Shown here: positions 5,281 to 62,823 of the stretch, piece after piece
Position numbering within the stretch: the first letter of the stretch is position 1
How the letters are laid out: the number at the start of each line of letters is the position of its first letter
Source: Octopus sinensis
Lineage: Eukaryota
Assembly: GCF_006345805.1 (NCBI RefSeq)
Contig: NC_043001.1
Location: 128,774,001-128,838,000, forward strand
Direction: 5' to 3'
Length of the DNA: 64,000 bases
Notes under the pieces: generated by a model
Database searches by the model: none
What the model was told of the DNA's origin: nothing
What the model saw: only the letters and a program-made list of their open reading frames with translations
Made by a program: the position numbers and the translations under genes

Positions 5281-5541
5281 ATAGCGATATCTGTATTTCT
5301 TCAATTCGTAAAAAAAACTTGTTTTCAAATTGTTATTGCTTAAAATACAATATTTCGCAAATTTAACGCTATGAAAGAGATATACATGTAGTAAATTTTA
5401 CCTCAGATAGGGAATGTATTTCAAGAGCTCTCCGACAGTAAAAGTTTAGAGAAAAATTGGGCTTAGTAGTTTTTTCATCGTTTCGTACTGTGTTACTGAA
5501 AAAGTTATTTGGTTCCCATAATGCTCTCCCCTGCTTTGCGC

Positions 5542-5920
<379 letters not shown>

Positions 5921-6103
5921 ATCTTTTTTTTATTTTATTTTATTTATTTGTTTTTGTTCTTCTTTTTCCCTTTTACGATCCCTTTTGATCGAAAACCTAC
6001 GCCACCTTTTTTTTGTTTTTTGTTTTTTTCATCCCCCAAAAGAAAAGCTCTACCTTGTAACTTGTCCCATCTGTGTGCAGCCCTGTGTGGCCAATAAAGA
6101 AAC

Positions 6104-6164
<61 letters not shown>

Positions 6165-6165
6165 G

Positions 6166-6383
6166 CAGTGGTTTTCAACCAGGGTTCCACGGAACCTTAG
6201 GGTTCTGCCAGTACAGTCCAGGGGTTCCGCAAGAAGGTACAAAACTGCTAAAATCGGCAGTAATTTTTAATTCTCTTGTGCAGATGTGTGTGCATAAGAC
6301 TATTAAATTATTGCACAGGGGTTCCTCGAGCCAGTGGAATGTTTCCTTGGGGTTCCGCTCCAGCAAAAAGTTGAAAAGCACTG
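6166..6383. mobile_element. hAT-type MITE, 218 bp
   Basis: TIRs CAGTGGTTTTCAAC / GTTGAAAAGCACTG; 8-bp TSD ATCTATCG (6158-6165) / ATCTACCG (6384-6391). Confidence 0.85.
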
Positions 6384-13561: not shown

Positions 13562-15290
13562 ATGTTTACGTGTATGTATGTATGCATGTATGTGTGAATG
13601 TATTTATGTGTGTGTGTGTATGTATGTATGTATGTATGTATGTATGTGTGAATGTATTTATGTGTGTGTGTATGTATGTATGTATGTATGTATGTATGTG
13701 TGAATGTATTTGTGTGTGTGTATGTATGTATGTATGTATGTATGTATGTGTGAATGTATTTATGTGTGTGTGTATGTATGTATGTATGTATGTATGTATG
13801 TATGTGTGAATGTATTTATGTGTGTGTGTATGTATGTATGTATGTATGTATGTATGTATGTATGTATGTTTGAATGTATTTATGTGTGTGTGTGTATGTA
13901 TGTATGTATGTATGTATGTATGTATGTGTGAATGTATTTATGTGTGTGTGTATGTATGTATGTATGTATGTATGTATGTATGTATGTGTGAATGTATTTA
14001 TGTGTGTGTGTGTATGTATGTATGTATGTATGTATGTATGTGTGAATGTATTTATGTGTGTGTGTATGTATGTATGTATGTATGTATGTATGTGTGAATG
14101 TATTTATGTGTGTGTGTATGTATGTATGTATGTATGTATGTATGTATGTATGTGTGAATGTATTTATGTGTGTGTGTATGTATGTATGTATGTATGTATG
14201 TATGTGTGAATGTATTTATGTGTGTGTGTATGTATGTATGTATGTATGTATGTATGTATGTGTGAATGTATTTATGTGTGTGTGTATGTATGTATGTATG
14301 TATGTATGTATGTATGTGTGAATGTATTTATGTGTGTGTGTATGTATGTATGTATGTATGTATGTATGTATGTATGTGTGAATGTATTTATGTGTGTGTG
14401 TATGTATGTATGTATGTATGTATGTATGTGTGAATGTATTTATGTGTGTGTGTATGTATGTATGTATGTATGTATGTATGTGTGAATGTATTTATGTGTG
14501 TTGTGTATGTATGTATGTATGTATGTATGTATGTATGTTGTATGTGTGAATGTATTTATGTTGTGTGTATGTATGTATGTATGTATGTATGTATGTGTGA
14601 ATGTATTTATGTGTGTGTGTATGTATGTATGTATGTATGTATATGTATGTATGTGTGAATGTATTTATGTGTGTGTGTATGTATGTATGTATGTATGTAT
14701 GTATGTGTGAATGTATTTATGTGTGTGTGTATGTATGTATGTATGTATGTATGTGTGAATGTATTTATGTGTGTGTATGTATGTATGTGTGAATGTATTT
14801 ATGTGTGTATGTATGTATGTACGTATGTATGCGTGTATGTATGTGCGCGCGTGTGTGTATATGTATGTATGTATGTGTGTATGTAAGTGTGTGTGAATGT
14901 ATTTATGTGTGTGTATTTATGTATGTGCGTGTGTGTGTATATGTATGCACGTATGTGTGTATATATGTATGTATATATGTATGTATGTATGTATGTATAT
15001 ATGTATGTATGTATGTATATATATGTATGTATGTATGTATATATGTATGTATGTATGTATATATTATGTATGTATGTATGTATGTATGGTATGTATGTAT
15101 GTATGTCTGTATGTATGTATGTAGTATGTATGTTGTATGTATGTATGTTATGTATGTATGTATGTCTGTATGTATGTATGTATGTATGTATGTATGTATG
15201 TCTGTATGTATGTATGTATGTATATATGTATGTATGTATATATGTATGTATGTATGTATATGTATGTGTGTGTGTGCGTATGTGTCCTAT
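13562..15290. repeat. Compound (TATG)n/(TG)n array with recurring GTGAATGTATTTAT spacer (~50-65 bp period)
   Basis: Directly visible; more than 20 spacer copies between 13590 and 14910. Confidence 0.95.
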
Positions 15291-15802
15291 GATGAATCGG
15301 AGTTTGGCCAAAAGTCAGGTAATTTGTATGGATTTATTCATTGTGGCGGTGGCAGTTAAGTCTTATGTCGTTACCGTTAAAGTAATTGGTATATTGGTAC
15401 AGCATTAGATGACAACCAGGTAGCGTACTGACCTACTTCGATACCACCACCACCACCACCGATATCACCTATATCATCATCTCCACCACCAACACCACCA
15501 TCACCACCACTACCACCATCACCACCACTACCACCACCACCACTACAACTACCACCACCACCACCACCACTACCACCACCAACACCACTACCACCACTAC
15601 CACTACCACCACCACCACCACCACCACCACTACCACCACTACTACCACCACCACCACTACCACCACAACCACTAGCACCACCACCACTACCACCACCACC
15701 ACCACCACCACCATCACCACCACCACCACCACCACCACCACCACTACCACCACTACCACTACCACCACCACTACACCACCACCACCACCACTACCACCAC
15801 CA

Positions 15803-20676: not shown

Positions 20677-20822
20677 AGGCGCAGGCGTGGCTCTCCCCGA
20701 TCACATGATTCTGGGTTCAGTCCCACTGCGTGACACCTCGCGTGAATGTCTTCTACTACTGCCCTGGGCCGACCAAAGTCTTGTGAATGGATTTAGTAGA
20801 TGGGAACTAAAAGAAGACCGTC
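20677..20822 (+). mobile_element. Diverged OR-type SINE head (A-box region deleted), host of the 7SL insertion
   Basis: AGGCGCAGGCGTGGCT...GGGTTCAGTCCCACTGCG...AAAGAAGACCGTC; its body resumes at ~21163 (GTGTTTGTCCACCTCCACCGCTTGACAAC). Confidence 0.8.
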
Positions 20823-21101
20823 CCTGTAATCCAGCTACTCGGAGGCTTGGTTGGTTGACCGGTTTGAGGATGGGAGTCCTGGTAGTCGGTCTTCTATGGC
20901 GATCGGGTGTCCGCGCTAAGCTCGGCATCAATATGGTGCTGGAGAGGGAGCTCATCAGGACCGGGTTGTCTAAGGAGGGTCGTTTCGGCCCAGGGTGGGA
21001 ACGCAGCAGGCAAAAGGCCCCGTGTCGAGCAATAGTGGGATCGAGCCTGTGAATAGTCGTCGGCTGGCAGCCTGTTCGATATAATTGAACTCCAACCTTT
21101 T
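20820..21101 (+). ncRNA. 7SL (SRP) RNA copy, 5'-truncated by about 15 nt; probable retrocopy
   Basis: CCTGTAATCCAGCTACTCGGAGGC (Alu domain), CGATCGGGTGTCCGCGCTAAGCTCGGCATCAATATGGTG, helix 6 GAG-GGAG-CTC (GNRA at 20947-50), helix 8 CAGG-GTG-GGAA-CGC-AGCAGG (GNRA at 20998-21001, SRP54 loop), AATAGTGGGATCGAGCCTGTGAATAG, ends CCAACCTTTT. Collinear with recalled metazoan 7SL. Confidence 0.93.
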
Positions 21102-21162
21102 AAAGGCGGTGCTCCAGCATGGCCGCAGTCAAATGACTGAAACAAGTAAAAGAGTAAAAGAG
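21102..21162 (+). mobile_element. OR-type SINE 3' tail fused directly to the 7SL 3' end
   Basis: AAAGGCGGTGCTCCAGCATGGCCGCAGTCAAATGACTGAAACAAGTAAAAGAGTAAAAGAG, matching the young copies at 29762, 34700 and 43160. Confidence 0.9.
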
Positions 21163-21229
21163 AATGTGTATGTGTTTGTCCACCTCCACCGCTTGACAAC
21201 TGGTATTGGTGTCTCTACATCTTCGTAAC

Positions 21230-21530
21230 TGAGACTTGTGAGTAGATTTGGTAGACAGAAACTGCAAGAAGCCCGCCGTGTATATAAATATATCTATGAA
21301 AGTGTCTTTGTGTCTGTATTTTTCCCTCGCCCTCATCGCTTGACAACCGGTGTTAGGGTGTTTATGTCCTCGTAAATTAGCAGTTTGGCAAAAAGAGTAC
21401 GATGGAACAAGTACCCGGTTTTAAAAAAATAAGTACTGGGAACAATTTGTTCGACTAAATCCTTCAAAGCGGTGCCCCAGCATGGCCGCAGTCAAATGAC
21501 TGAAAACAATCAGAAGATAACAGATAAAAG
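21230..21530 (+). mobile_element. Diverged, 5'-truncated OR-type SINE
   Basis: CTTGTGAGTAGATTTGGTAGACAGAAACTG...GCGGTGCCCCAGCATGGCCGCAGTC. Confidence 0.75.
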
Positions 21531-25728: not shown

Positions 25729-25905
25729 TCTTTACTACCCACAAGGGGCTAAACACAAAGGGGATAAACAAGGACGTACTTAATTTATCGACCCCGAAAG
25801 GATGAAAGGCAAAGCCGACCTCGGCGGAATTTGAACCCAGAACGTAACGGCAGACGAAATACGGCTACGCATTTCGCCCAGCGTGCTAACGTTTCTGCCA
25901 GCTCA
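25728..25905 (-). mobile_element. OK-type SINE with internal deletion
   Basis: TTTCTTTACTACCCACAAGGGG...TTTCTGCCAGCTC. Confidence 0.8.
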
Positions 25906-25914
25906 AACTCTTTC

Positions 25915-26467
25915 ATTCATTCATTCATACATATATACATACATACATGTATCATACATACATACATACATACATACATACATACATACATACATACATG
26001 TATACATACATACATACATACATGTATCATACATACATACATACATACATACATACATACATGCATGCGTACATACATACATACATACATATCTGTACAT
26101 ACATACATACATACATACATACATACATACATGCATACATACATACATACATACATACATACATGCATACATACAACATACATACATACATATATACATA
26201 CATATCTATACATACATGCATACATACATACATACAGACATACATACATACATACATACATACAAACAGACATGCATACATACACACACACACACATACA
26301 TACATACATACATACATACATACATACATACATACATACATACGTGCATGCATGCATGCATACATACACACACACACACACATACATACACACACACACA
26401 CACACATACACCCCCCACACACATACATACATACATACATACACACACATACATACACTCCCCCCAC

Positions 26468-26498
<31 letters not shown>

Positions 26499-26535
26499 TA
26501 CATACACCCCCACACACACATACATACATACATAC
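25915..26535. repeat. (CATA)n/(CA)n microsatellite
   Basis: Directly visible. Confidence 0.95.
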
Positions 26536-26695
26536 AAGGCAATCAATAGGCAGAGTTGTTACAGGATCGAATAAAATGTGTTGTAATATTTGTTGCTTCT
26601 GTATTCTGTGTTAAAATTCTACTAAGTTTAACGTTGCCTTTTACTTTTTTCAAGGTTGATAAATAAAATACCAGCCCAGTGTTGTCTCTCACCAG

Positions 26696-27230: not shown

Positions 27231-27612
27231 GATATGTACTAATACCAAATCACCCTCGATTACAACTGATCGCCATGATACACACACGCATGCACGCACA
27301 CACACACACACACATTGTCAGTAGTTCATATATCCAAAACAGAAGCAGAATCTTAAGCATTAGAGCAGTAATATATTTTTTAGGAAGTTTGGTGCCCCAG
27401 CATGGCCGCGGCCTTCGGGCTAAAACATTTTAAAGGATTTATACCTATACGGCTAAACGCTTTATAGCTGCGAAACCAATGGTCACTCTACGACCGGCCA
27501 TAACTTTTAACTTCCCGATATATATATTTACATATTAAGTAAAAAGCAGCTCTAGTATAATAAACATTATTAACCAGGTATGGTTAATAATATTTAGGTT
27601 TGCAATTTCCAG

Positions 27613-43225: not shown

Positions 43226-43954
43226 AGATTACATATATACTTAATTAGTCAATAAATTATATGAATTGGTATTATCTGTAAGTTGATGATTGAAAGGAAT
43301 CTGTTCCTCCATTTTCTTATTTGTATTATGATTTTGAAGTAAAACATTTTACCTTCGCCCATCTAATACAATAAATGAACTAATTGCATTGCAATTGTAA
43401 GCATTTATGTATTAGCCTTTTGGGTACTTCACTGGCAGTATATTGAATAACTGATATCCCATAGTGGGTTACACTCATAACCCCTATCTCACTTTGTACT
43501 ATATGTATGTACATCATCATCATCATCATTTAGCGTCCGCTTTCCATGCTAGCATGGGTTGGACGGTTCAACTGGGGCCTGTGAAGCCAGAAGGCTTCAT
43601 CAGGCCTAGTCTGATCTGGCAGTGTTTCTACGGCTGGATGCCCTTCCTAACGCCAACCACTCCGTGAGTGTAGTGGGTGCTTTTTATATATATATATATA
43701 TATACACACATATGAGTGTGTGTATGTATGCATGTATGTATATACAGGGTATAGTGAATAATTATTATTATTTGACTGCGGTTAAACTTTTGGTAGCCAC
43801 AACTTTTCCTGCTGACAAACTATTTATTTTTTTCTTGTTTACTCTTTACTCTTTACTCTTTTACTTGTTTCAGTCATTTGCTCGACTAAAGGCGGTGCTC
43901 CAGCATGGCCGCAGTCAAATAACTGAAACAAGTAAAAGAGTATAAAAGAGTTTA

Positions 43955-47642: not shown

Positions 47643-47790
47643 ATACCTATTTCTTTATTACCCACAAGGGGCTAAACACAGAGGGGACAAACAAGGACAG
47701 ACATAGGTATTAAGTCGATTACATCGACCCCAGTATGTAACTGGTACTTAATTTATCGACCCCGAAAGGATGAAAGGCAAAGTCGACCAC
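47643..47790 (-). mobile_element. 5'-truncated OK-type SINE
   Basis: TACCTATTTCTTTATTACCCACAAGGGG...AAAGTCGACC. Confidence 0.85.
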
Positions 47791-49200
47791 CACCAATACC
47801 ACCACCACTACCACCACCACCACCACCGCTGCTGCTGCCACCAGTGCCATTCACTACTATCGCCACCAGTGTCATCCACCACCACCACCACCACCACTAC
47901 CACCACTACTACTGCGATCATCACTACCACCACCACTGCCACTCCTGCCACCACTGCATACCATCACTATCACCATCAACAAAGCAAGTATAGCCAAACA
48001 CTACCGTCATCACTGCCAATATCACAGTTATGCACTTTCAGTGTCATTGTTGACATCATTACTACTGCTGCCACCAAAACCACCACCACCACCACCACAT
48101 GTCATCATCACTAATCTTTTGTTACACGCTTCTATTACCACCACCACCACCACCATTACCATCACCACCACCACCACTATCACCACCACTGTCACCACCA
48201 CCACCATTACCAACACCACCACCACCACTATCACCACCACCACCACCACCACTGTCAATATCACCACCATCACTGCTGCCACAATCACCCTCCCCCTCCA
48301 CCAGCACTACCACTACCACCATCACCATTGTCACCATCACCATCACCGCTGCCTACAATCACCACCACCACTACCACCACCATCACCACCACCACCACCA
48401 CCACCACCACCACCACTGTCAACATCACCACCATCACCATTGTCACCATCACCATCACCACTACCACCACCACCACCACCACCACTGTCAACATCACCAC
48501 CATCACCATTGTCACCATCACCATCACCGCTGCCTACAATCACCACCACCACTACCACCACCACCACCACCACCACTGTCAACATCACCACCATCACCAT
48601 TGTCACCATCACCATCACCGCTGCCACAATCACCACCACCACAACCACCATCGCCGCTGCCACCCATAAATCGTTTGTCACACACTTCCATCACCAAAAT
48701 CAACAGAACCCACACCATCTATGCCACTAAATCACCCTACATCACCATCACAAACCTACACCAGATAACCATTACATCATCATCATCATCATCGTCACAA
48801 TGCTAAACACCACCACACAACCAACAATTTTTTGCACTCACTTTTACTGTTGCTGCTGTCACCTCACCCCCACCCTAACCCCACGCCACCCCCGTGGTCC
48901 CCCCACCCGCCATCATCGCTACCACTGCTACCATGAAGACAATGAAGATGACGATGATGACGACGCCGATGACGACCACCACCACGACCACCACTACCAC
49001 CACGACCACCACCACTACTACAACCACGACGACGACGACCACCACCACCACCACTACCATCACCACCACGAACACCACCACGACTACCATCGCCACCACT
49101 ACGACCACCACCACGACCACCACGACCACCACGACCACCACCACCACTACCATCACCACCACCACCACCACGATCACCACCACCATATTGCAGGGCCAAT
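47790..49200. repeat. (ACC/ATC/ACG)n low-complexity array with local higher-order repeats
   Basis: Directly visible; ACTGTCAACATCACCACCATCACCATTGTCACC block repeated about three times. Confidence 0.92.
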
Positions 49201-49738
49201 AACTCTATCACACATGTCCATACCACATCATCTTGTCATACGACTTCCCGATTATATGACATCAACATCACCCACATCATTACAGCACCATACGATTGAA
49301 CCACACACACACACACCAACATACCGCCACATCACGTCACACCACACACGCACACACGCATACACGCACGCACATATCACACCACACACAATCAAACAAT
49401 AACTAACCTTCCCCACCTTCGCATTCCCACAAACCCCCACCCTCGCCCAAAGAGTCAAGCAATCCATTAAGATAGAATTCAGTTTTTAATTACATTTGAT
49501 TATCAAGTCAATTTTGAGTCGGTCATTAAACTAACCTTAACTGGACACTAACTGCACAGTATTTTAAAAACGTTGCAATAATGAGGCAATGAGGGAAGCT
49601 ATACGTGATCACAAGATCTGCTAGAAATAACAGCCAAATCTGCCTTTAATCACACCTTACTTTCTTAACCCTTTAATATTTACACTGGCAAAATCTGGTC
49701 AAAATATTCTATTTGTTTTATGTTCAAACTGGCCAAGC

Positions 49739-49919: not shown

Positions 49920-50453
49920 GGCCAAGCCCTGCCTTTCACACCTGTCCTACAACGTCATTCTAAAAGTAAACAATCCCAAAATCTCAAAGCTACAAAATAT
50001 CATTTACTATTCTTTTGTCTTTCACCTGTTTCAGTAATTTGATTGTGGCCATGCTGGGGTACCACCTTGAAGGCTTTTAGTCAAACAAATCAACTCTAGC
50101 ACTTTTACTGAACTGCTATGTTATGGGGATGTAAACACACCAACACCAGTTGTCAAACAATGGTGGGGAACAACCACAGACACAAAGATATAATAGTAAT
50201 AATAATACTTTCTACTAAAGGCACAATGCCTGAAATTTTGGGGTTTGGCGGAGGGGGTTCATTCAATTAGATTGGCACCAGTATGCAACTGGCACTTAAT
50301 TTGTAGACCCAAAAGGATGAAAGGCAAAGCTGACCTCAGCGGAATTTGAACTCAGAACATAAAAACATGAAATGCCGCTAAGCATTTTGCCCAGTATGCT
50401 AATGACTCAGCCAGCTCACTGCCTTAATGATGATGATGATGATGATAGTAGTA

Positions 50454-51807: not shown

Positions 51808-52360
51808 TGGATGGGCTAGTGATACCGTCAGGAGAGGTTATGAAGCAGATAGAAGAGATGGGCTATAAGTACTTGGGGATATTAGAAATAGATAAATCGA
51901 TGGAGAAATAAATGACAGACAAAGTTAAGGTGGAGTACTTGCACAGACTGAGACTGACCCTAAAGTCAAAATTAAATGGATGGAATAAGATTGAAGCTAT
52001 CAACACCTGGGTGGTTTCACTCCTTAGATCTGGATCTGGGATAAGCGCATGGCCAGTAGACGAACTAAACAGCTTAGGTAGAAAGACAAAAAAGTTGCTG
52101 ACTAGATATGGGATACTCCACCCAAAAAGTGACATAGACAGAGCGTATGTACCAAGAAAAAGAGGGGGAAGAGGACTGATTGGATGTGAACACAGCATTA
52201 GAACAGAAGAAAACAACATAGCATGGTATGGGTATGTAAAAAATGCCACAGAACCACTATTATTGGAAGTAAGAAGGTCAGGCTTGTGTAGAATAGAAGA
52301 TTGCATAGATAAAGCATTTTATAAGCACTTGAGAATGATTGAAAACTTTTACCACAATAG
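51807..52360 (+). pseudogene. R4/Dong-clade non-LTR retrotransposon RT C-terminal fragment
   Basis: GYKYLGILE, EYLHRLRLTLKSKLNGWNKIEAINTW, LHPKSDIDRAYVPRKRGGRGLI; begins right after (AAT)n. Confidence 0.85.
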
Positions 52361-52691
52361 AGGGAGGAAAAGAAATTATCTAGAAATAGTTTAATATTTA
52401 TACATATGATATACTTAAATACTAACTTATAAGATGGTTCTGTGAATATTGATCAATTGGTATATACTGGTATTTAATAGGTTTTTTTTAATGACTATAC
52501 TCACTATAAATTCTGTAAACTCCCTCAGCCCCATTCCTAACAGACATTGCTCCTTGTTCTCTTGGGCCTTAGATATAAACACTACTGATTCACTTGTTCC
52601 AAAAGACAAGTTGGTCAAGGTTAAAATCCCTTTGACCACAAGACTGCCTGATTAAGTTTATCTGAGGTTAAATGACAAATCTAAGGAGGAT

Positions 52692-56470: not shown

Positions 56471-57574
56471 ACCACACAGCCACGCTTGCACCTGATGATG
56501 AGGAGGAGAAGGTGCCCATTGAACCAGAATTAAACTGGGCTCTCTAAAATCTAAACTAAGTCCTTGGTAGAGATTGTTTCCCAGAATGTTACTCAGCTTT
56601 AAGTAGAAATTTATTCATATACCTACACATAAACAGAATTTCAGTTTTTTTTTGTGGCATTGCGTCAGATTTTAAATTTTTCAGCCAGATATAAATTGCA
56701 CCTCATCAATTGACTAGAATAAGTGTTTGCAATTTAAACAAAACTCTAGCGTATAAGAATAAGAGGAAAGGCATGGCTATTACAGCTTCCGATCTCCTTT
56801 GTTCACCGTTATATTTCAAAGATCTCTTCAATTCAGATTTCAAGATGTATGTGTGCATATATGTGCTTGCATATGGGTGTGTATCTGTCCATTTGTATGT
56901 GTGTGTGTCTGTGTGTGTGCACATGCGTGTCTGTGTGTACGTGTGTATTTTTTATACTTTCATGTTCTTTTGAACACTAAATTGTACTAACAATAGAAAT
57001 GAGGAATGAATTTCTAATTTGCATATTTGATATGGCTATTGCGATATTTTATTGTTGTTGTGGTTAATGTTTGTGGTAGCTGTTACGTTTTTGGTTTTCT
57101 TTAGCAAGGTGGCAGTGGTGGTAGTTGGAGGTGGTGGTGGCTGGAGATAGTAGTGATAGTGATGATGGTTGGAGGTGATGGAAATGGTTGGAGGAGGTGG
57201 TGGTTGTGGTTATGTTAATGGTGATGGTGGAGCAGGTGGTGGTGGTGGTGGTGGTTATGGTAATGGGGAAGATGGAGGAGGTGGTGGTGATGGTGGTATA
57301 AATCGGCAGGTTTAAAGAGATCATTCCTCTGATTAACTCAGACACTTCCGCCATTCCAAGAGCTATGAAACTTTGCCTGCAGAGATGAATTCTGAAAGTT
57401 ATGGTCAGAGAGAGAAGAAAGAAAGAAAGAAAGTAAAAAAAAAAGAAAAAAAGAAACAAGTAACAAGAACACAGCAACAATAACAACAACAAAGAACACA
57501 CAATGAAAATACAAAACAAAAACAAATTATTATGAACCTGCCATTGTATTAATAATTCTTCCTTTATAGAATTT

Positions 57575-58145
57575 ACACACACACACACACACACCACACA
57601 CACACATACACACACACACGCACACACACACACTCACAAACACACATACTCACACACACAAACACACACACACACACACACACTCACAAACATGCACTCA
57701 CACACACATAATCACACTCACAAACACACATACACACACACACACACACACTCACAAACACACACACTCACACACACAAACACACACACACACCACACAC
57801 ACACACACACACTCACAAACATGCACTCACACACACATAATCACACTCACAAACACACACTCACACTCACAAGCACACATACACACACACACACACACAC
57901 ACTCACAAACACACACACTCACACACACAAACATACACACACACACACACTCACACACACACACACAAACATGCGCACACTTCCCCCATTAAACACACAT
58001 ACATGCATATACAAGCACCACATGTTTTTACACATGCACATACAGAAGTACACTCACACGCACACATGGACACACACACACACACATATACACATGCACA
58101 CACACACACTCACACGCACACACACATACACACACACACACACAC
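57575..58145. repeat. (CA)n-based compound repeat
   Basis: Directly visible. Confidence 0.92.
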
Positions 58146-59117
58146 TTCATTTTCATTTCATCATCATTAATTTAAGTTTTATGGTTGATCTTTTTTTTCC
58201 TTCTTTTTCTTTTCCATGATGACATGGGCAAACAGAAGGGGCCTTAACAAAAGCAGTACTGAGTGCTGCTGGACTCTAGATACCTTATAGTTTCACTCCT
58301 GCATGCCCTGAGTTCAATTCCCAGAGACTCTGATTTAAAAATTTCATTTCATAATCATGTGATTTCACATTCATTCCCATGGCTGGCAATGTTGCAAAAT
58401 GTTTCCTGCCACATAGACAGATTAGCCCAAACTTTGTGGGTGAAATTAGGCACATTAGGTTTGTCAGAGAGATTGAGTAAGTTGTTAGGTAGAAAAATTA
58501 ATCCACCAATTGGTCCTCCTCCTCCTCCTCCTCCACCGGCACCACCAACACCAGCAGCAGTAGCAGCAGCAGTAGCAGCAGCAGTACCACCACCACCACC
58601 ACCACCACCACCACTACTATAACCTGAGTTTGGGGTGCCTTTAGTAGAATGATGAGCTTCCATACAGTTTCTGCCAACCAAATTCACTCACAAGGCATTG
58701 GTCAGCCCAAAGCTATAGTAGAAGATGCTTGCTGAAGGTGCTGTGTGGTGGGAGTGAACCTGAAACTTCATGGTTGCAAAGTGAATTTTTTTTATTGAAA
58801 GGAAGCAGCCTTGACTCTTTATTTTTTCAGGGTCTCTAAGACTTGTTGGGTGGATGAAGACAGGGAGTTTATCCATAAATCAGGGATCTGGTTTAATCCT
58901 TCAGCATCCAGATTACTCTGTCAAATGCAATGCTTATTTATTCATGCTGTTTTGAATTAATCATGCATTCCTTGGAGCTTTGAGATTTCAATGATGTGAT
59001 TGTTTATTGTAGGGTAGCAGTGAGAAGCCTGATCTGGCTGGTTTTAATATAAATCATGTAGAATATTTGGACCCAGATAGGGCCAGTTTAAAAACAAAAG
59101 GCTTCAATGCTTGCCAT

Positions 59118-61199: not shown

Positions 61200-62302
<1,103 letters not shown>

Positions 62303-62823
62303 CTTCAGTGAAAAGAAATAAATATTGAAGTGATGCATACCTAGAGAGACTCAAACACATATTCGCACAGAAATGCATATGTCCACACAAGTACACATTT
62401 ACACACAAAAGTTTTCCTCCCCCCCACCATATATCCACATAGTTATGTATGTGTCTGTGTGTTGCAGAGAAACTAGTAGTAGTAGGAGGAGGAGGAAGAG
62501 GAGGAAGGAGCAAGGGAGTAGTAGAGATCAGATACATACACAGTCTCCCAAAGTCTCTTCGTTGTTATCATTGTCATCATTGTCACCATCATCGTCATCA
62601 TCATCATCGGTGAGCTGGTAGATTCGTTCGTACAATGGGCATGATGCTTAATTGCATTTTGTCTGTCTCTGTGTTCTGAGTTCAAATTCTGCTGAGGTTG
62701 ACTTTATCTTACATCCTCTTGGGGTTGATAAATTAAGAACCTACAAAACAGTAGGGTCGATGTAATCGACTGGTCCCCTCCTGTCAAAATTTCAGGCCTT
62801 GTGCCTATAGCAGAAAGGATTTT

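What the first reader, a model, noticed from the sequence alone, without database searches (positions are those of the whole stretch)
20677..21228. 7SL/SRP RNA fused to a young SINE 3' tail: chimeric retrocopy or nascent 7SL-derived SINE in an octopus-type genome
Seen: an almost complete 7SL RNA (Alu domain, helix 6 GGAG loop, helix 8 GGAA loop with the SRP54-binding CAGG/AGCAG motif, terminal UUUU) lacking about 15 nt at its 5' end. Its U-tract runs straight into the last ~60 nt of the OR-type SINE, which match the young consensus. The unit sits inside an older, visibly diverged SINE whose body resumes at ~21163; the 5' junction shares CGTC with the host. Established: SINE tails are what the partner LINE recognises; small-RNA/LINE chimeras such as U6-L1 arise by template switching or RNA ligation; as far as I recall, 7SL-derived SINEs are known from Euarchontoglires (Alu, B1) and hagfish. 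Inference: 7SL was captured by the octopus SINE/LINE machinery. If the fusion is multicopy it is an undescribed molluscan SINE1 family; if single-copy it is a snapshot of how such SINEs are born. The upstream SINE B box might also allow Pol III transcription.
Basis: partly seen in the sequence, partly recalled or inferred. Interest (0 to 1): 0.86.

Follow-up and report, generated by a model that had tools for sequence, protein, structure and literature searches.

The report
7SL RNA retrocopy fused to SINE tail
This is a dead, reverse-transcribed copy of the signal-recognition-particle RNA (7SL) that was pasted into the genome because it became joined to the short 3' "address tag" of a mobile element; the genome holds dozens of such independent fusions (also with U6 and 5S RNA), so it is a by-product of mobile-element copying already known from vertebrates and fungi, not a new family of jumping genes.

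Summary
Window 20823-21100 is 7SL/SRP RNA (Rfam RF00017, 202 bits) lacking its first 20 nt. It ends in TTTT and runs directly into 55 nt identical to the last 55 nt of the genome's abundant ~400-nt SINE, plus (GTAAAAGA)2. The unit sits in the internal microsatellite of an older SINE.

Genome-wide, about 55-60 7SL-derived loci were found. About 10 are genes (a cluster at C5:117.0 Mb) and about 40 are retrocopies. Nearly every retrocopy is joined at its U-tract to a retroposon 3' end:
- at least four tail types occur, or a longer or full-length SINE;
- linkers differ from locus to locus;
- at least three 7SL source variants are involved;
- divergence ranges from 0.7 to 19%.

The window's exact junction is unique. 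A T4-T5 Pol III terminator precedes the tail, so such copies should not make tail-bearing transcripts. The same junction, at the base of a conserved two-hairpin tail, occurs in 39 U6-tail chimeras and one 5S chimera.

Best explanation: recurrent template switching (less likely RNA ligation) by a tail-specific LINE reverse transcriptase, as described for U6 with L2, RTE and their SINEs in vertebrates. It is a chimeric retropseudogene, not a SINE1 family: a new member of a known kind, of moderate interest.

The parts
20677..20822 (+). 5' part of the older host SINE (consensus positions 1-163). It has a 17-nt deletion in the box-A region, its box-B-like GGTTCAGTCCC is retained, and it is about 15% diverged.
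   Evidence: Pairwise alignment to the 403-nt SINE consensus; consensus built.
20823..21100 (+). 7SL/SRP RNA retrocopy covering positions 21-298 of the 298-nt gene. The first 20 nt are missing. It carries 6 substitutions relative to the gene-cluster consensus (2.2%).
   Evidence: Rfam RF00017 202.4 bits; BLAST to gene copy L004; differences listed; placed inside the gene-cluster clade in the tree.
21098..21101 (+). TTTT: the U-tract of the 7SL transcript, which is also a Pol III terminator lying between the 7SL part and the tail. The 4th T is ambiguous with SINE consensus position 349.
   Evidence: Sequence. Genes carry T7-T12 at this place, and most chimeras carry T3-T6.
21101..21155 (+). Retroposon 3' tail, identical (55/55) to SINE consensus 349-403. 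It comprises an A-run, hairpin 1 (21105-21124, GGCGGTGCTCCAGCATGGCC), hairpin 2 (21126-21139, CAGTCAAATGACTG) and AAAC (21140-21143).
   Evidence: BLAST to consensus; RNA folds of tails A, B and C give the same two-hairpin shape; pair counts show 98.3% paired with two covarying pairs.
21146..21164 (+). Terminal short tandem repeat (GTAAAAGA)2 G followed by AA: the microsatellite-like 3' end of the inserted unit.
   Evidence: Sequence; the same repeat ends other copies of the SINE in the window.
21165..21233 (+). Resumption of the host SINE (consensus 205-274, about 21% diverged).
   Evidence: Alignment.
21232..21505 (+). A second, 5'-truncated and diverged SINE copy (consensus 118-401, about 76% identity) abutting the host. 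It is not part of the chimera.

Best explanation
The feature is a chimeric retropseudogene.

How it arose:
1. A mature 7SL transcript from the gene cluster 11.8 Mb away on the same chromosome-scale contig, ending in its short U-tract, became joined to the ~55-nt 3' tail of the genome's SINE/LINE system.
2. A LINE reverse transcriptase that starts only on that tail began target-primed reverse transcription on a SINE (or LINE) RNA. The tail consists of two hairpins, AAAC and a short tandem repeat.
3. The enzyme copied the tail domain. At its 5' base (the A-run CTAAA|GGCGG) it switched template to the 3' end of a 7SL RNA.
4. It copied all but the last 20 nt of the 7SL RNA, and the cDNA was integrated in the TA/TG microsatellite of an older SINE.

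What the product is: an inert pseudogene. It has no gene-type upstream region, and the 5' 20 nt, with part of the Alu domain and the internal promoter region, are missing. A T4 terminator sits ahead of the tail, so any Pol III transcript would lose the tail and could not be copied again.

The same accident has happened repeatedly in this genome with 7SL (about 40 loci), U6 (at least 39 loci) and 5S rRNA. The window copy is therefore one single-copy event of a recurrent process, not a member of a self-propagating SINE1 family.

Shown:
- the anatomy of the window copy;
- the RNA origin of the 7SL part (short U-tract, near-full-length or 5'-truncated copies, dispersed loci);
- recurrence and heterogeneity of the fusions;
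- the fixed junction at the base of the tail;
- the conserved two-hairpin tail.

Inferred:
- template switching as the joining step;
- the LINE partner and its tail specificity;
- lack of transcription.
For: Anatomy of the window copy.

Genes compared with retrocopies:
- Eight intact copies at C5:117.013-117.041 Mb plus C5:118.57 Mb share a conserved upstream sequence and T7-T12 terminators.
- They carry no tail.

Recurrence and heterogeneity:
- Short-tail chimeras carry tail A (9 loci including the window), tail B (7), tail C (6), tail D (2 loci) or another tail (1).
- Nine loci join 7SL to a full-length SINE, starting exactly at the SINE 5' end.
- Four loci join 7SL to longer partial SINE 3' parts.
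- Two further loci join an internal 7SL fragment to a tail or SINE 3' part (L073, L074).
- Junction linkers differ at nearly every locus.

Source variants:
- One strongly supported 7SL clade (SH-aLRT 95) contains fusions to tails A, B and C and to a full SINE.
- Tail types are as scattered on the 7SL tree as shuffled labels: 8 changes for 8 rows, 6 for 6 and 5 for 5.
- The window copy falls in the gene-cluster clade.

Census:
- Only 46 and 38 genome hits for two 7SL 27-28-mers, with 0 in the controls.
- Tail B alone has 8,656 near-exact copies, so the chimeras are rare by-products.

Junction hot spot:
- Eleven 7SL chimeras start at SINE consensus positions 349-351.
- Ordinary 5'-truncated SINE copies start at scattered positions (118 to 338).

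Tail structure.

Generality:
- 39 exact U6-3'-end-to-tail junctions, 0 in the control, with the same boundary and all three tails.
- L077 is 7SL(10-170) + 143 nt + a full 5S rRNA (107.6 bits) + tail B, as expected from serial template jumps.

LINE link: tail C directly follows a LINE-like ORF end in L066.

Literature:
- Stringent LINEs form only chimeras with U6, with tiny TSDs of 1-9 bp (PMC4476161).
- The criteria for chimeric retrogenes, 7SL among the partners, hot-spot switching below hairpins, and tripartite chimeras are described (PMC2104539).
Against: - No target-site duplication is visible around the window insert. Integration as a single unit is therefore inferred from recurrence and from the host-SINE alignment, not proven at this locus.
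- Only one other locus shows a clear 5-bp duplication (C18, AACCT).
- Template switching cannot be told from RNA ligation followed by reverse transcription using sequence alone.
- The 7SL tree is poorly resolved (2 starred branches). Strongly supported branches force only 2 or more origins per tail type.
- Three variant-7SL + tail B loci (C11, C2, C21) have near-identical junctions and could share one origin.
- The LINE partner was not classified: Pfam gave no hit on the short ORF fragments.
- No transcript or population data were available.
Confidence: 0.85

Rival explanations
1. A nascent or undescribed 7SL-derived SINE (SINE1) family. In this reading one 7SL-tail fusion became a master copy, is transcribed by Pol III, and is re-copied by the LINE machinery.
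For: - 7SL-tail fusions are multicopy.
- Three variant-7SL + tail B loci (C11, C2, C21) have almost the same junction and differ little.
- The hagfish SINE1 family arose from exactly such a 7SL/SINE chimera (PMC7245038).
Against: - There is no uniform structure. Tails, linkers, T-run lengths, 5' ends and 7SL variants differ from locus to locus.
- Tail types are unclustered on the 7SL tree.
- The window's exact junction is unique.
- There are only about 40-60 7SL-derived loci in 2.72 Gb.
- No internal deletion or other derived feature separates them from plain retrocopies, which is the criterion used in PMC7245038.
- A T4-T5 terminator precedes the tail.
- U6 and 5S form the same fusions, which points to a general by-product.
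Confidence: 0.05
2. The product is the same but the joining step differs. The 3' end of 7SL RNA was ligated to the 5' end of a cleaved SINE/LINE RNA fragment (RtcB-type RNA ligation, as proposed for U6/L1), and the chimeric RNA was then reverse-transcribed from its tail.
For: - The junction falls at one place, the single-stranded A-run between two hairpins. This could be a preferred RNA cleavage site.
- U6, whose 3' end is a ligase substrate (my recollection of the U6/L1 ligation work, not checked here), is the most frequent partner: 39 exact hits against 9 for 7SL under like-for-like patterns.
Against: - 7SL and 5S are not known to carry the cyclic-phosphate ends that such ligation needs (established knowledge, not tested here).
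- Nine fusions start exactly at the 5' end of a full-length SINE, as expected for end-to-end template jumping.
- Internal 7SL fragments and a multipartite 7SL-X-5S-tail locus fit serial jumps.
- A/G-rich fillers occur at some junctions.
Confidence: 0.12
3. Two unrelated events or an artefact: a tail-less 7SL pseudogene that later received a 5'-truncated SINE insertion at its T-run, DNA-level recombination, or a mis-assembly.
For: No TSD brackets the unit in the window. The region is a nest of SINE fragments.
Against: - The same head-to-tail arrangement, in the same orientation and with the same tail boundary, recurs at about 25 short-tail 7SL loci and 39 U6 loci with unrelated flanks, and 0 in reversed-pattern controls.
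- Among the dispersed near-full-length 7SL copies only two lack a retroposon 3' end, and both carry long T-runs with TATA-like upstream boxes and are probably genes. A few short fragments could not be classified.
- Ordinary truncated SINE copies do not start at position 349-351.
Confidence: 0.03

Closest known systems
U6 snRNA chimeras with stringent LINEs and their SINEs (platypus L2/Mon-1; Anolis L2, RTE, AnolisSINE2) - Doucet et al. 2015, PMC4476161
   Same: - A Pol III small RNA is joined in sense orientation to a short 3' piece of a tail-specific LINE or its partner SINE.
- There are only chimeras, with no poly(A) retrocopies.
- TSDs are tiny or absent, and the element ends in a simple-repeat 3' end.
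- This genome also has at least 39 U6-tail chimeras.
   Different: - The 5' partner here is 7SL RNA.
- The host is a cephalopod-type invertebrate genome.
- At least four tail types are used in parallel.
- Most 7SL parts are near full length, whereas the platypus U6 parts are mostly 5'-truncated.
- The junction is pinned to the base of a two-hairpin tail domain.
Chimeric retrogenes of mammals and Magnaporthe (Buzdin 2003; Gogvadze et al. 2007, PMC2104539) and 7SL/L1 chimeras (bioRxiv 10.1101/2025.02.02.635956)
   Same: - The 5' part is a copy of an abundant cellular RNA; 7SL is listed among the partners.
- The 3' part is a 5'-truncated LINE or SINE, with direct sense-sense joining.
- Template-switch hot spots lie just below hairpins in the fungus.
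- Tripartite chimeras occur, as in L077 here.
   Different: - In mammals the partner is poly(A)-dependent L1, truncated at random lengths.
- Here the 3' part is almost always the minimal ~55-nt tail or the whole SINE.
- Clear TSDs (criterion v) are mostly lacking here.
SINE1 families: Alu/B1 (Euarchontoglires) and SINE1-1_EBu (hagfish; Kojima 2020, PMC7245038)
   Same: A 7SL-derived 5' part. For hagfish, also a 3' part taken from an existing SINE/stringent-LINE system through chimera formation.
   Different: - SINE1 families have a uniform structure, an internal deletion of the S domain and thousands of copies (2,363 full-length in hagfish).
- They also have an internal promoter that transcribes the whole unit.
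- The octopus-type loci are full-length 7SL retrocopies with heterogeneous junctions and about 40 copies in total.
- They carry a terminator ahead of the tail.
P7SL_Cpo / P7SL_MD (full-length 7SL + poly(A) in guinea pig and marsupials; discussed in PMC7245038)
   Same: Full-length 7SL retrocopies whose status as a SINE family is doubted, because they may simply be repeated retrocopies of the RNA.
   Different: Those carry poly(A) (L1-type mobilisation). These carry a specific structured tail.

Membership tests
Metazoan SRP (7SL) RNA, Rfam RF00017 | Covariance-model score at or above the gathering threshold (70 bits) | tested here: met
   202.4 bits, E 6.9e-54. Intact genes of the same genome score 245-252 bits.
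Functional 7SL gene of this genome | Complete 5' end, the conserved upstream region seen at the gene cluster, and a long T-run followed by non-repeat flank | tested here: not met
   - The first 20 nt are missing.
- The upstream sequence is a diverged SINE, not the conserved 'aggtttaagtaattaaattcg.acaggtgccat' of the cluster.
- The T-run is T4 and is followed by a SINE tail.
Chimeric retrogene (criteria i-v of PMC2104539) | (i) The 5' part is a full-length copy of a cellular RNA | tested here: inconclusive
   The window copy lacks 20 nt. Most sister loci start at 7SL positions 1-6.
Chimeric retrogene (criteria i-v of PMC2104539) | (ii)+(iv) The 3' part is a 5'-truncated LINE/SINE copy, joined directly in the same orientation | tested here: met
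   SINE consensus 349-403 at 55/55 identity, directly after the U-tract on the same strand.
Chimeric retrogene (criteria i-v of PMC2104539) | (iii) Truncation sites are random (mammals) or at hot spots below hairpins (fungus) | tested here: met
   - There is a hot spot at consensus 349-351 in 11 7SL chimeras, and at the same boundary in 39 U6 chimeras.
- The hairpin GGTCGA..TCGACT lies immediately upstream in the SINE.
- A second mode lies at the exact SINE 5' end.
Chimeric retrogene (criteria i-v of PMC2104539) | (v) Flanked by short direct repeats | tested here: not met
   - No TSD is seen at the window locus.
- One clear 5-bp duplication is seen elsewhere (C18), and the others are ambiguous because they lie in microsatellites.
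- Tiny or absent TSDs are reported as normal for L2-type chimeras (PMC4476161).
SINE1 (7SL-derived SINE family; criteria from PMC7245038) | Uniform chimeric structure among many copies | tested here: not met
   - Tails, linkers, 5' ends and source variants are heterogeneous.
- The window junction is unique.
SINE1 (7SL-derived SINE family; criteria from PMC7245038) | A derived feature, such as an internal deletion, that distinguishes it from plain 7SL retrocopies | tested here: not met
   The window copy is collinear with the gene from position 21 to 298 with no indels.
SINE1 (7SL-derived SINE family; criteria from PMC7245038) | A Pol III transcript that includes the tail (transposition competence) | not testable with these tools
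   By sequence, a T4 terminator (21098-21101) lies ahead of the tail, and the 5' 20 nt and the gene-type upstream region are absent. No expression data are available.
SINE1 (7SL-derived SINE family; criteria from PMC7245038) | 3' tail shared with a partner LINE | tested here: inconclusive
   - Tail C directly follows a LINE-like ORF end in L066.
- Tails A, B and C share the hairpin-1 core.
- The LINE carrying tail A itself was not found, and the LINE clade is not determined.
tRNA-derived 'OR-type' octopus SINE (host element and tail donor) | tRNA-related head with box A and box B; identity to the published OR1/OR2 sequences | tested here: inconclusive
   - Box-A-like TGGCTGTGTGG and box-B-like GGTTCAGTCCC are visible in the consensus.
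- ARAGORN calls no tRNA in the consensus, and Rfam gives no tRNA hit in the window.

The most novel reading that the evidence does not exclude
One of the recurrent fusions has begun to propagate as the first protostome SINE1 lineage. One candidate is the variant-7SL + tail B group with near-identical junctions on C11, C2 and C21. Another is the older set in which 7SL is joined to a full-length SINE. In that case the window copy and its relatives would document every intermediate step of SINE birth in one genome.
Probability: 0.06. Interest if true: 0.75.

Novelty: new member of a known kind. Interest (0 to 1): 0.4.

Why it matters
The finding shows that, in a cephalopod-type genome dominated by tail-specific retroposons, abundant Pol III RNAs (7SL, U6, 5S) reach new loci only after being fused to a ~55-nt two-hairpin tail. 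This is the same rule seen for stringent LINEs in platypus and lizard.

The natural chimeras map the 5' boundary of the tail that the reverse transcriptase appears to need. They also supply ready-made head-tail fusions, the raw material from which new SINEs are thought to arise. That makes the minimal cis-signal and the template-switch site testable in this system.

For annotation, these loci should be labelled SRP-RNA pseudogenes or chimeric retrocopies. They are neither 7SL genes nor a SINE1 family.

Tried and rejected
- Simple read-through of a real 7SL gene into a neighbouring SINE: rejected. The genes have long T-runs and no tail.
- A high-copy Alu-like family: rejected. Patterns for the Alu-domain and for the 3' end of 7SL give only 38 and 46 genome hits.
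- TSD search around all chimeras: mostly uninformative, because insertions lie in TA/CA microsatellites. Only C18 gives a clean 5-bp repeat.
- A general 5'-truncation hot spot of the SINE at position ~350: rejected. Ordinary truncated copies start elsewhere. Two apparent extra cases (window 50018-50068, L029 1859-1904) were just diverged SINE copies in which BLAST aligned only the tail.
- Classifying the partner LINE with Pfam on the two ORF fragments of L066: no hit. My impression that its C-terminus resembles CR1-type LINEs rests on memory only.
- Looking for a LINE in the window: no long RT ORF was found.
- Fetching 30 tail B loci to survey what else is fused to tails: not possible.
- Window 27390-27440, a tail C copy without a SINE body: tested as another small-RNA chimera, but there is no Rfam hit even at E<=1.
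- The idea that the acceptor 7SL RNA was oligoadenylated (A11 and A/G-rich fillers at 3 junctions): kept only as a weak speculation. Most U6 and 7SL junctions are explained by the donor's own CTAAA run.
- ARAGORN on the SINE consensus: negative.
Full report
1. WHAT IS IN THE WINDOW

Rfam finds a single RNA family in the 64 kb: Metazoa_SRP at 20799-21100 (+), 202.4 bits, E 6.9e-54. The first two dozen bases of that hit are poorly paired host sequence.

BLAST against an intact gene copy from the same genome places real 7SL homology at 20823-21100, which is 7SL positions 21-298 at 97.5% identity. Against the consensus of the gene cluster the copy has six substitutions and no indels (2.2%).

The copy ends in TTTT (21098-21101). 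It continues without a break into 55 nt that are identical to positions 349-403 of a 403-nt SINE consensus I built from 14 full-length copies. These are followed by (GTAAAAGA)2. The same tail occurs eight times in the window, against 0 expected by chance.

The unit interrupts an older SINE:
- 20677-20822 = consensus 1-163, about 15% diverged, with a 17-nt deletion in the box-A region.
- 21165-21233 = consensus 205-274, about 21% diverged.

The insertion therefore sits in the host's internal TA/TG microsatellite. No target-site duplication is visible.

2. THE REST OF THE GENOME

The window is G000:C5:128,774,001-128,838,000 of a 2.72-Gb assembly.

Genes. Intact 7SL copies (245-252 bits) form a cluster at C5:117.013-117.041 Mb, with one more at C5:118.57 Mb. 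They share a conserved upstream sequence and T7-T12 terminators followed by unrelated AT-rich DNA. Two dispersed variant copies (C5:115.31 and 125.28 Mb) have T14-T15 runs, TATA-like upstream boxes and no tail. They are probably variant genes.

Copy number. Two independent 7SL patterns give 46 hits (3' end) and 38 hits (Alu domain), with 0 in the reversed controls. I collected about 68 loci. There is no high-copy Alu-like derivative.

3. NEARLY EVERY DISPERSED COPY IS A FUSION

The dispersed copies fall into these classes:

| Class | Loci |
|---|---|
| 7SL + short tail A (CAGTCAAATGACTGAAAC...(AAAAGAGT)n) | 9, including the window |
| 7SL + short tail B (CAGCTCRTGAGCTGAAAC...(AATC)n) | 7 |
| 7SL + short tail C (GCGGCCTTCGGGCTAAAAC...(AAGGATTT)n) | 6 |
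| 7SL + short tail D (...CATGCTAGCATGG...(ATG)n) | 2 |
| 7SL + another tail | 1 |
| 7SL U-tract abutting the exact 5' end of a full-length SINE | 9 |
| 7SL joined to longer partial SINE 3' parts | 4 |

Two of the loci counted above use an internal 7SL fragment rather than the 7SL 3' end: L073 (7SL 11-120 + tail B, among the tail B loci) and L074 (7SL 5-214 + the last ~150 nt of the SINE, among the partial-SINE loci).

Other features of these loci:
- Linkers differ almost everywhere. Examples are CCTTT|TAAAGG, CCTTT|AAAGG, CTAT|TAAAGAAAAAGG, CCTTT|A11TTAAGG and CCTTT|CAGAAACAGCGG.
- U-tracts are mostly 3-6 T, against T7-T15 in the genes. This is what mature Pol III transcripts would give.
- 5' ends are mostly at 7SL positions 1-6. 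A minority are truncated at 11, 13, 16, 21 (the window), 26, 30 and 129.
- Divergence from the gene consensus runs from 0.7% to about 19%. The process is therefore old and recently active.

4. INDEPENDENT EVENTS, NOT A FAMILY

- The alignment shows at least three 7SL source variants.
- A well-supported clade (SH-aLRT 95) that includes the C5:125.28 Mb variant gene contains fusions to tails A, B and C and to a full SINE.
- The gene-cluster clade, which holds the window copy, contains fusions to tails A, B and C and to partial SINEs.
- On the tree, tail types are no more clustered than shuffled labels: A needs 8 changes for 8 rows, B 6 for 6 and C 5 for 5. The tree is weakly resolved, so this rests jointly on the junction differences.
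- The window's exact junction occurs once in the genome. The best other match to window 20960-21160 is 91% identical.
- A T4-T5 run, a Pol III terminator, always lies between the 7SL part and the tail. A transcript started in the 7SL part should therefore lose the tail.
- The window copy also lacks the 5' 20 nt and the gene-type upstream region. Any such transcript would stop at the T4 in any case.

By the criteria that Kojima used for the hagfish SINE1 (PMC7245038), this is not a SINE1 family. Those criteria are a uniform structure, a derived internal deletion and thousands of copies.

5. THE JUNCTION AND THE TAIL

Eleven tail A chimeras begin at SINE consensus positions 349-351. Ordinary 5'-truncated SINE copies in the same data begin at scattered positions, from 118 to 338.

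Tails A, B and C fold into the same shape:
- Hairpin 1 (GGC.GGUGC-UCCA-GCAU.GCC) is conserved.
- Hairpin 2 has covarying stems: CAGUC/GACUG, CAGCU/AGCUG and GGCC/GGCU.
- AAAC and a short tandem repeat follow.

On 20 distinct tails, 98.3% of cells pair, against 21-43% when the partners are slid. Two pairs change on both sides. Only about three tail lineages are involved, so this is suggestive rather than strong.

The fusion point lies 0-6 nt upstream of hairpin 1, in the A-run CTAAA. In the SINE a further hairpin (GGUCGA...UCGACU) lies immediately upstream. This resembles the pause sites below hairpins reported at template-switch hot spots in Magnaporthe (PMC2104539).

Tail B alone has 8,656 near-exact copies. 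In L066, tail C follows directly on a LINE-like ORF end. The tails therefore belong to high-copy retroposons and, at least for tail C, to a LINE.

6. THE PROCESS IS GENERAL

- A pattern joining the conserved U6 snRNA 3' end to the tail core within 25 nt gives 39 exact hits and 0 in the control. The boundary is the same and all three tails occur. The like-for-like 7SL pattern gives 9 hits.
- L077 is 7SL(10-170) + 143 nt of unknown origin + a complete 5S rRNA (Rfam 107.6 bits) + 9 nt + tail B. This multipartite chimera is of the kind attributed to serial template jumps.

7. MECHANISM

Best-supported model:
1. A tail-specific LINE reverse transcriptase starts target-primed reverse transcription on the tail of a SINE or LINE RNA.
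2. It copies the two-hairpin domain.
3. It jumps to the 3' end of an abundant small RNA, either at the base of that domain or at the 5' end of the SINE RNA.
4. The cDNA is integrated, often in TA/CA microsatellites, with little or no TSD.

This is what Doucet et al. describe for U6 with L2/Mon-1 in platypus and with L2, RTE and AnolisSINE2 in lizard. Their description includes the absence of poly(A) retrocopies and TSDs of 1-9 bp (PMC4476161).

RNA ligation before reverse transcription cannot be excluded from sequence. It fits less well with the fusions at the exact SINE 5' end, with the internal 7SL fragments and with the multipartite locus.

Two unrelated insertions, or a mis-assembly, are very unlikely given about 65 loci with the same architecture.

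8. NOVELTY

I found no paper on 7SL or U6 chimeras in cephalopods or other molluscs in the library. Chimeric retrogenes that include 7SL, and small-RNA fusions with stringent LINEs and their SINEs, are established. The hagfish work explicitly separates SINE1 families from chimeric 7SL retrocopies.

The finding is therefore a new member of a known kind. The modestly new points are:
- the taxon;
- 7SL as a frequent partner;
- the parallel use of four tails;
- a junction pinned to the base of a ~55-nt two-hairpin tail.

9. LIMITS

- Genome counts are lower bounds.
- No more genome DNA could be cut.
- The partner LINE clade and the name of the SINE were not verified.
- The species was not identified.
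- No transcript, long-read or cross-species data were available.

Noticed in passing
G000:C5:117,012,986-117,040,831 (loci L001-L005, L007, L009, L049) and C5:118,570,359: A cluster of at least 8 near-identical 7SL genes lies in both orientations within ~28 kb. The copies share an upstream sequence and T7-T12 terminators. One copy inside the cluster is 5'-truncated (7SL 97-298). One more gene lies 1.5 Mb away.
   Followed up: partly
G000, 39 places listed (e.g. C2:192342592-192342631, C9:26326726-26326766): The U6 snRNA 3' end is joined through its T-run to the same tail domain (tails A, B and C). There are 39 exact pattern hits and 0 in the control, about four times more than 7SL under a comparable pattern.
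   Followed up: partly
L077 990-1480 (G000:C4:147.866 Mb): A multipartite chimera: 7SL positions 10-170, then 143 nt of unknown origin, then a complete 5S rRNA (Rfam 107.6 bits), then 9 nt, then tail B with (ATAAAG)3.
   Followed up: partly
window 27390-27440 (+): A tail C copy (TGGTGCCCCAGCATGGCCGCGGCCTTCGGGCTAAAAC...) with no SINE body upstream. The preceding ~70 nt match no Rfam family even at E<=1. It may be a truncated LINE end or a chimera with an unknown RNA.
   Followed up: partly
window 43855-43941: Two tail A fragments sit head-to-head: a 26-nt inverted copy directly abuts a 66-nt forward tail. The forward copy starts at SINE consensus 338, not at the usual truncation points.
   Followed up: no
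L063 307-611 and 1457-1761 (G000:C15:36.308-36.309 Mb); L052 (C17:6.063 Mb): 7SL is fused to a fourth tail type (..CCAACCCATGCYAGCATGGAAAA..TAAATGATGATGA). The C15 locus is duplicated in tandem with a period of ~1.15 kb, so some copies spread by DNA duplication after insertion.
   Followed up: no
G000 contig C5: Six of the ~40 7SL chimeras, plus two fragments, lie on C5. This is the contig that carries all the 7SL genes, and it makes up only ~5% of the assembly. The excess is mild and unexplained.
   Followed up: no
L066 1077-2026 (-) (G000:C3:167.293 Mb): The 3' end of a LINE-like ORF (..LDYCSQLWSP..LEAIQRSYTKKI..SLERRRERY.VIYIWKILEGL..) runs straight into tail C. This is a candidate autonomous partner. 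Pfam gave no hit on the fragments.
   Followed up: partly
window 5440-6200, 14790-15410, 25770-26610, 47770-49400, 57060-58220, 61290-62560: Long low-complexity and microsatellite tracts (TA/TG/CA-rich, CCN-rich) produce spurious long ORFs. No convincing protein-coding ORF of 150 aa or more was seen in the window, apart from a short LINE-like C-terminal fragment at 51912-52394 (+).
   Followed up: no
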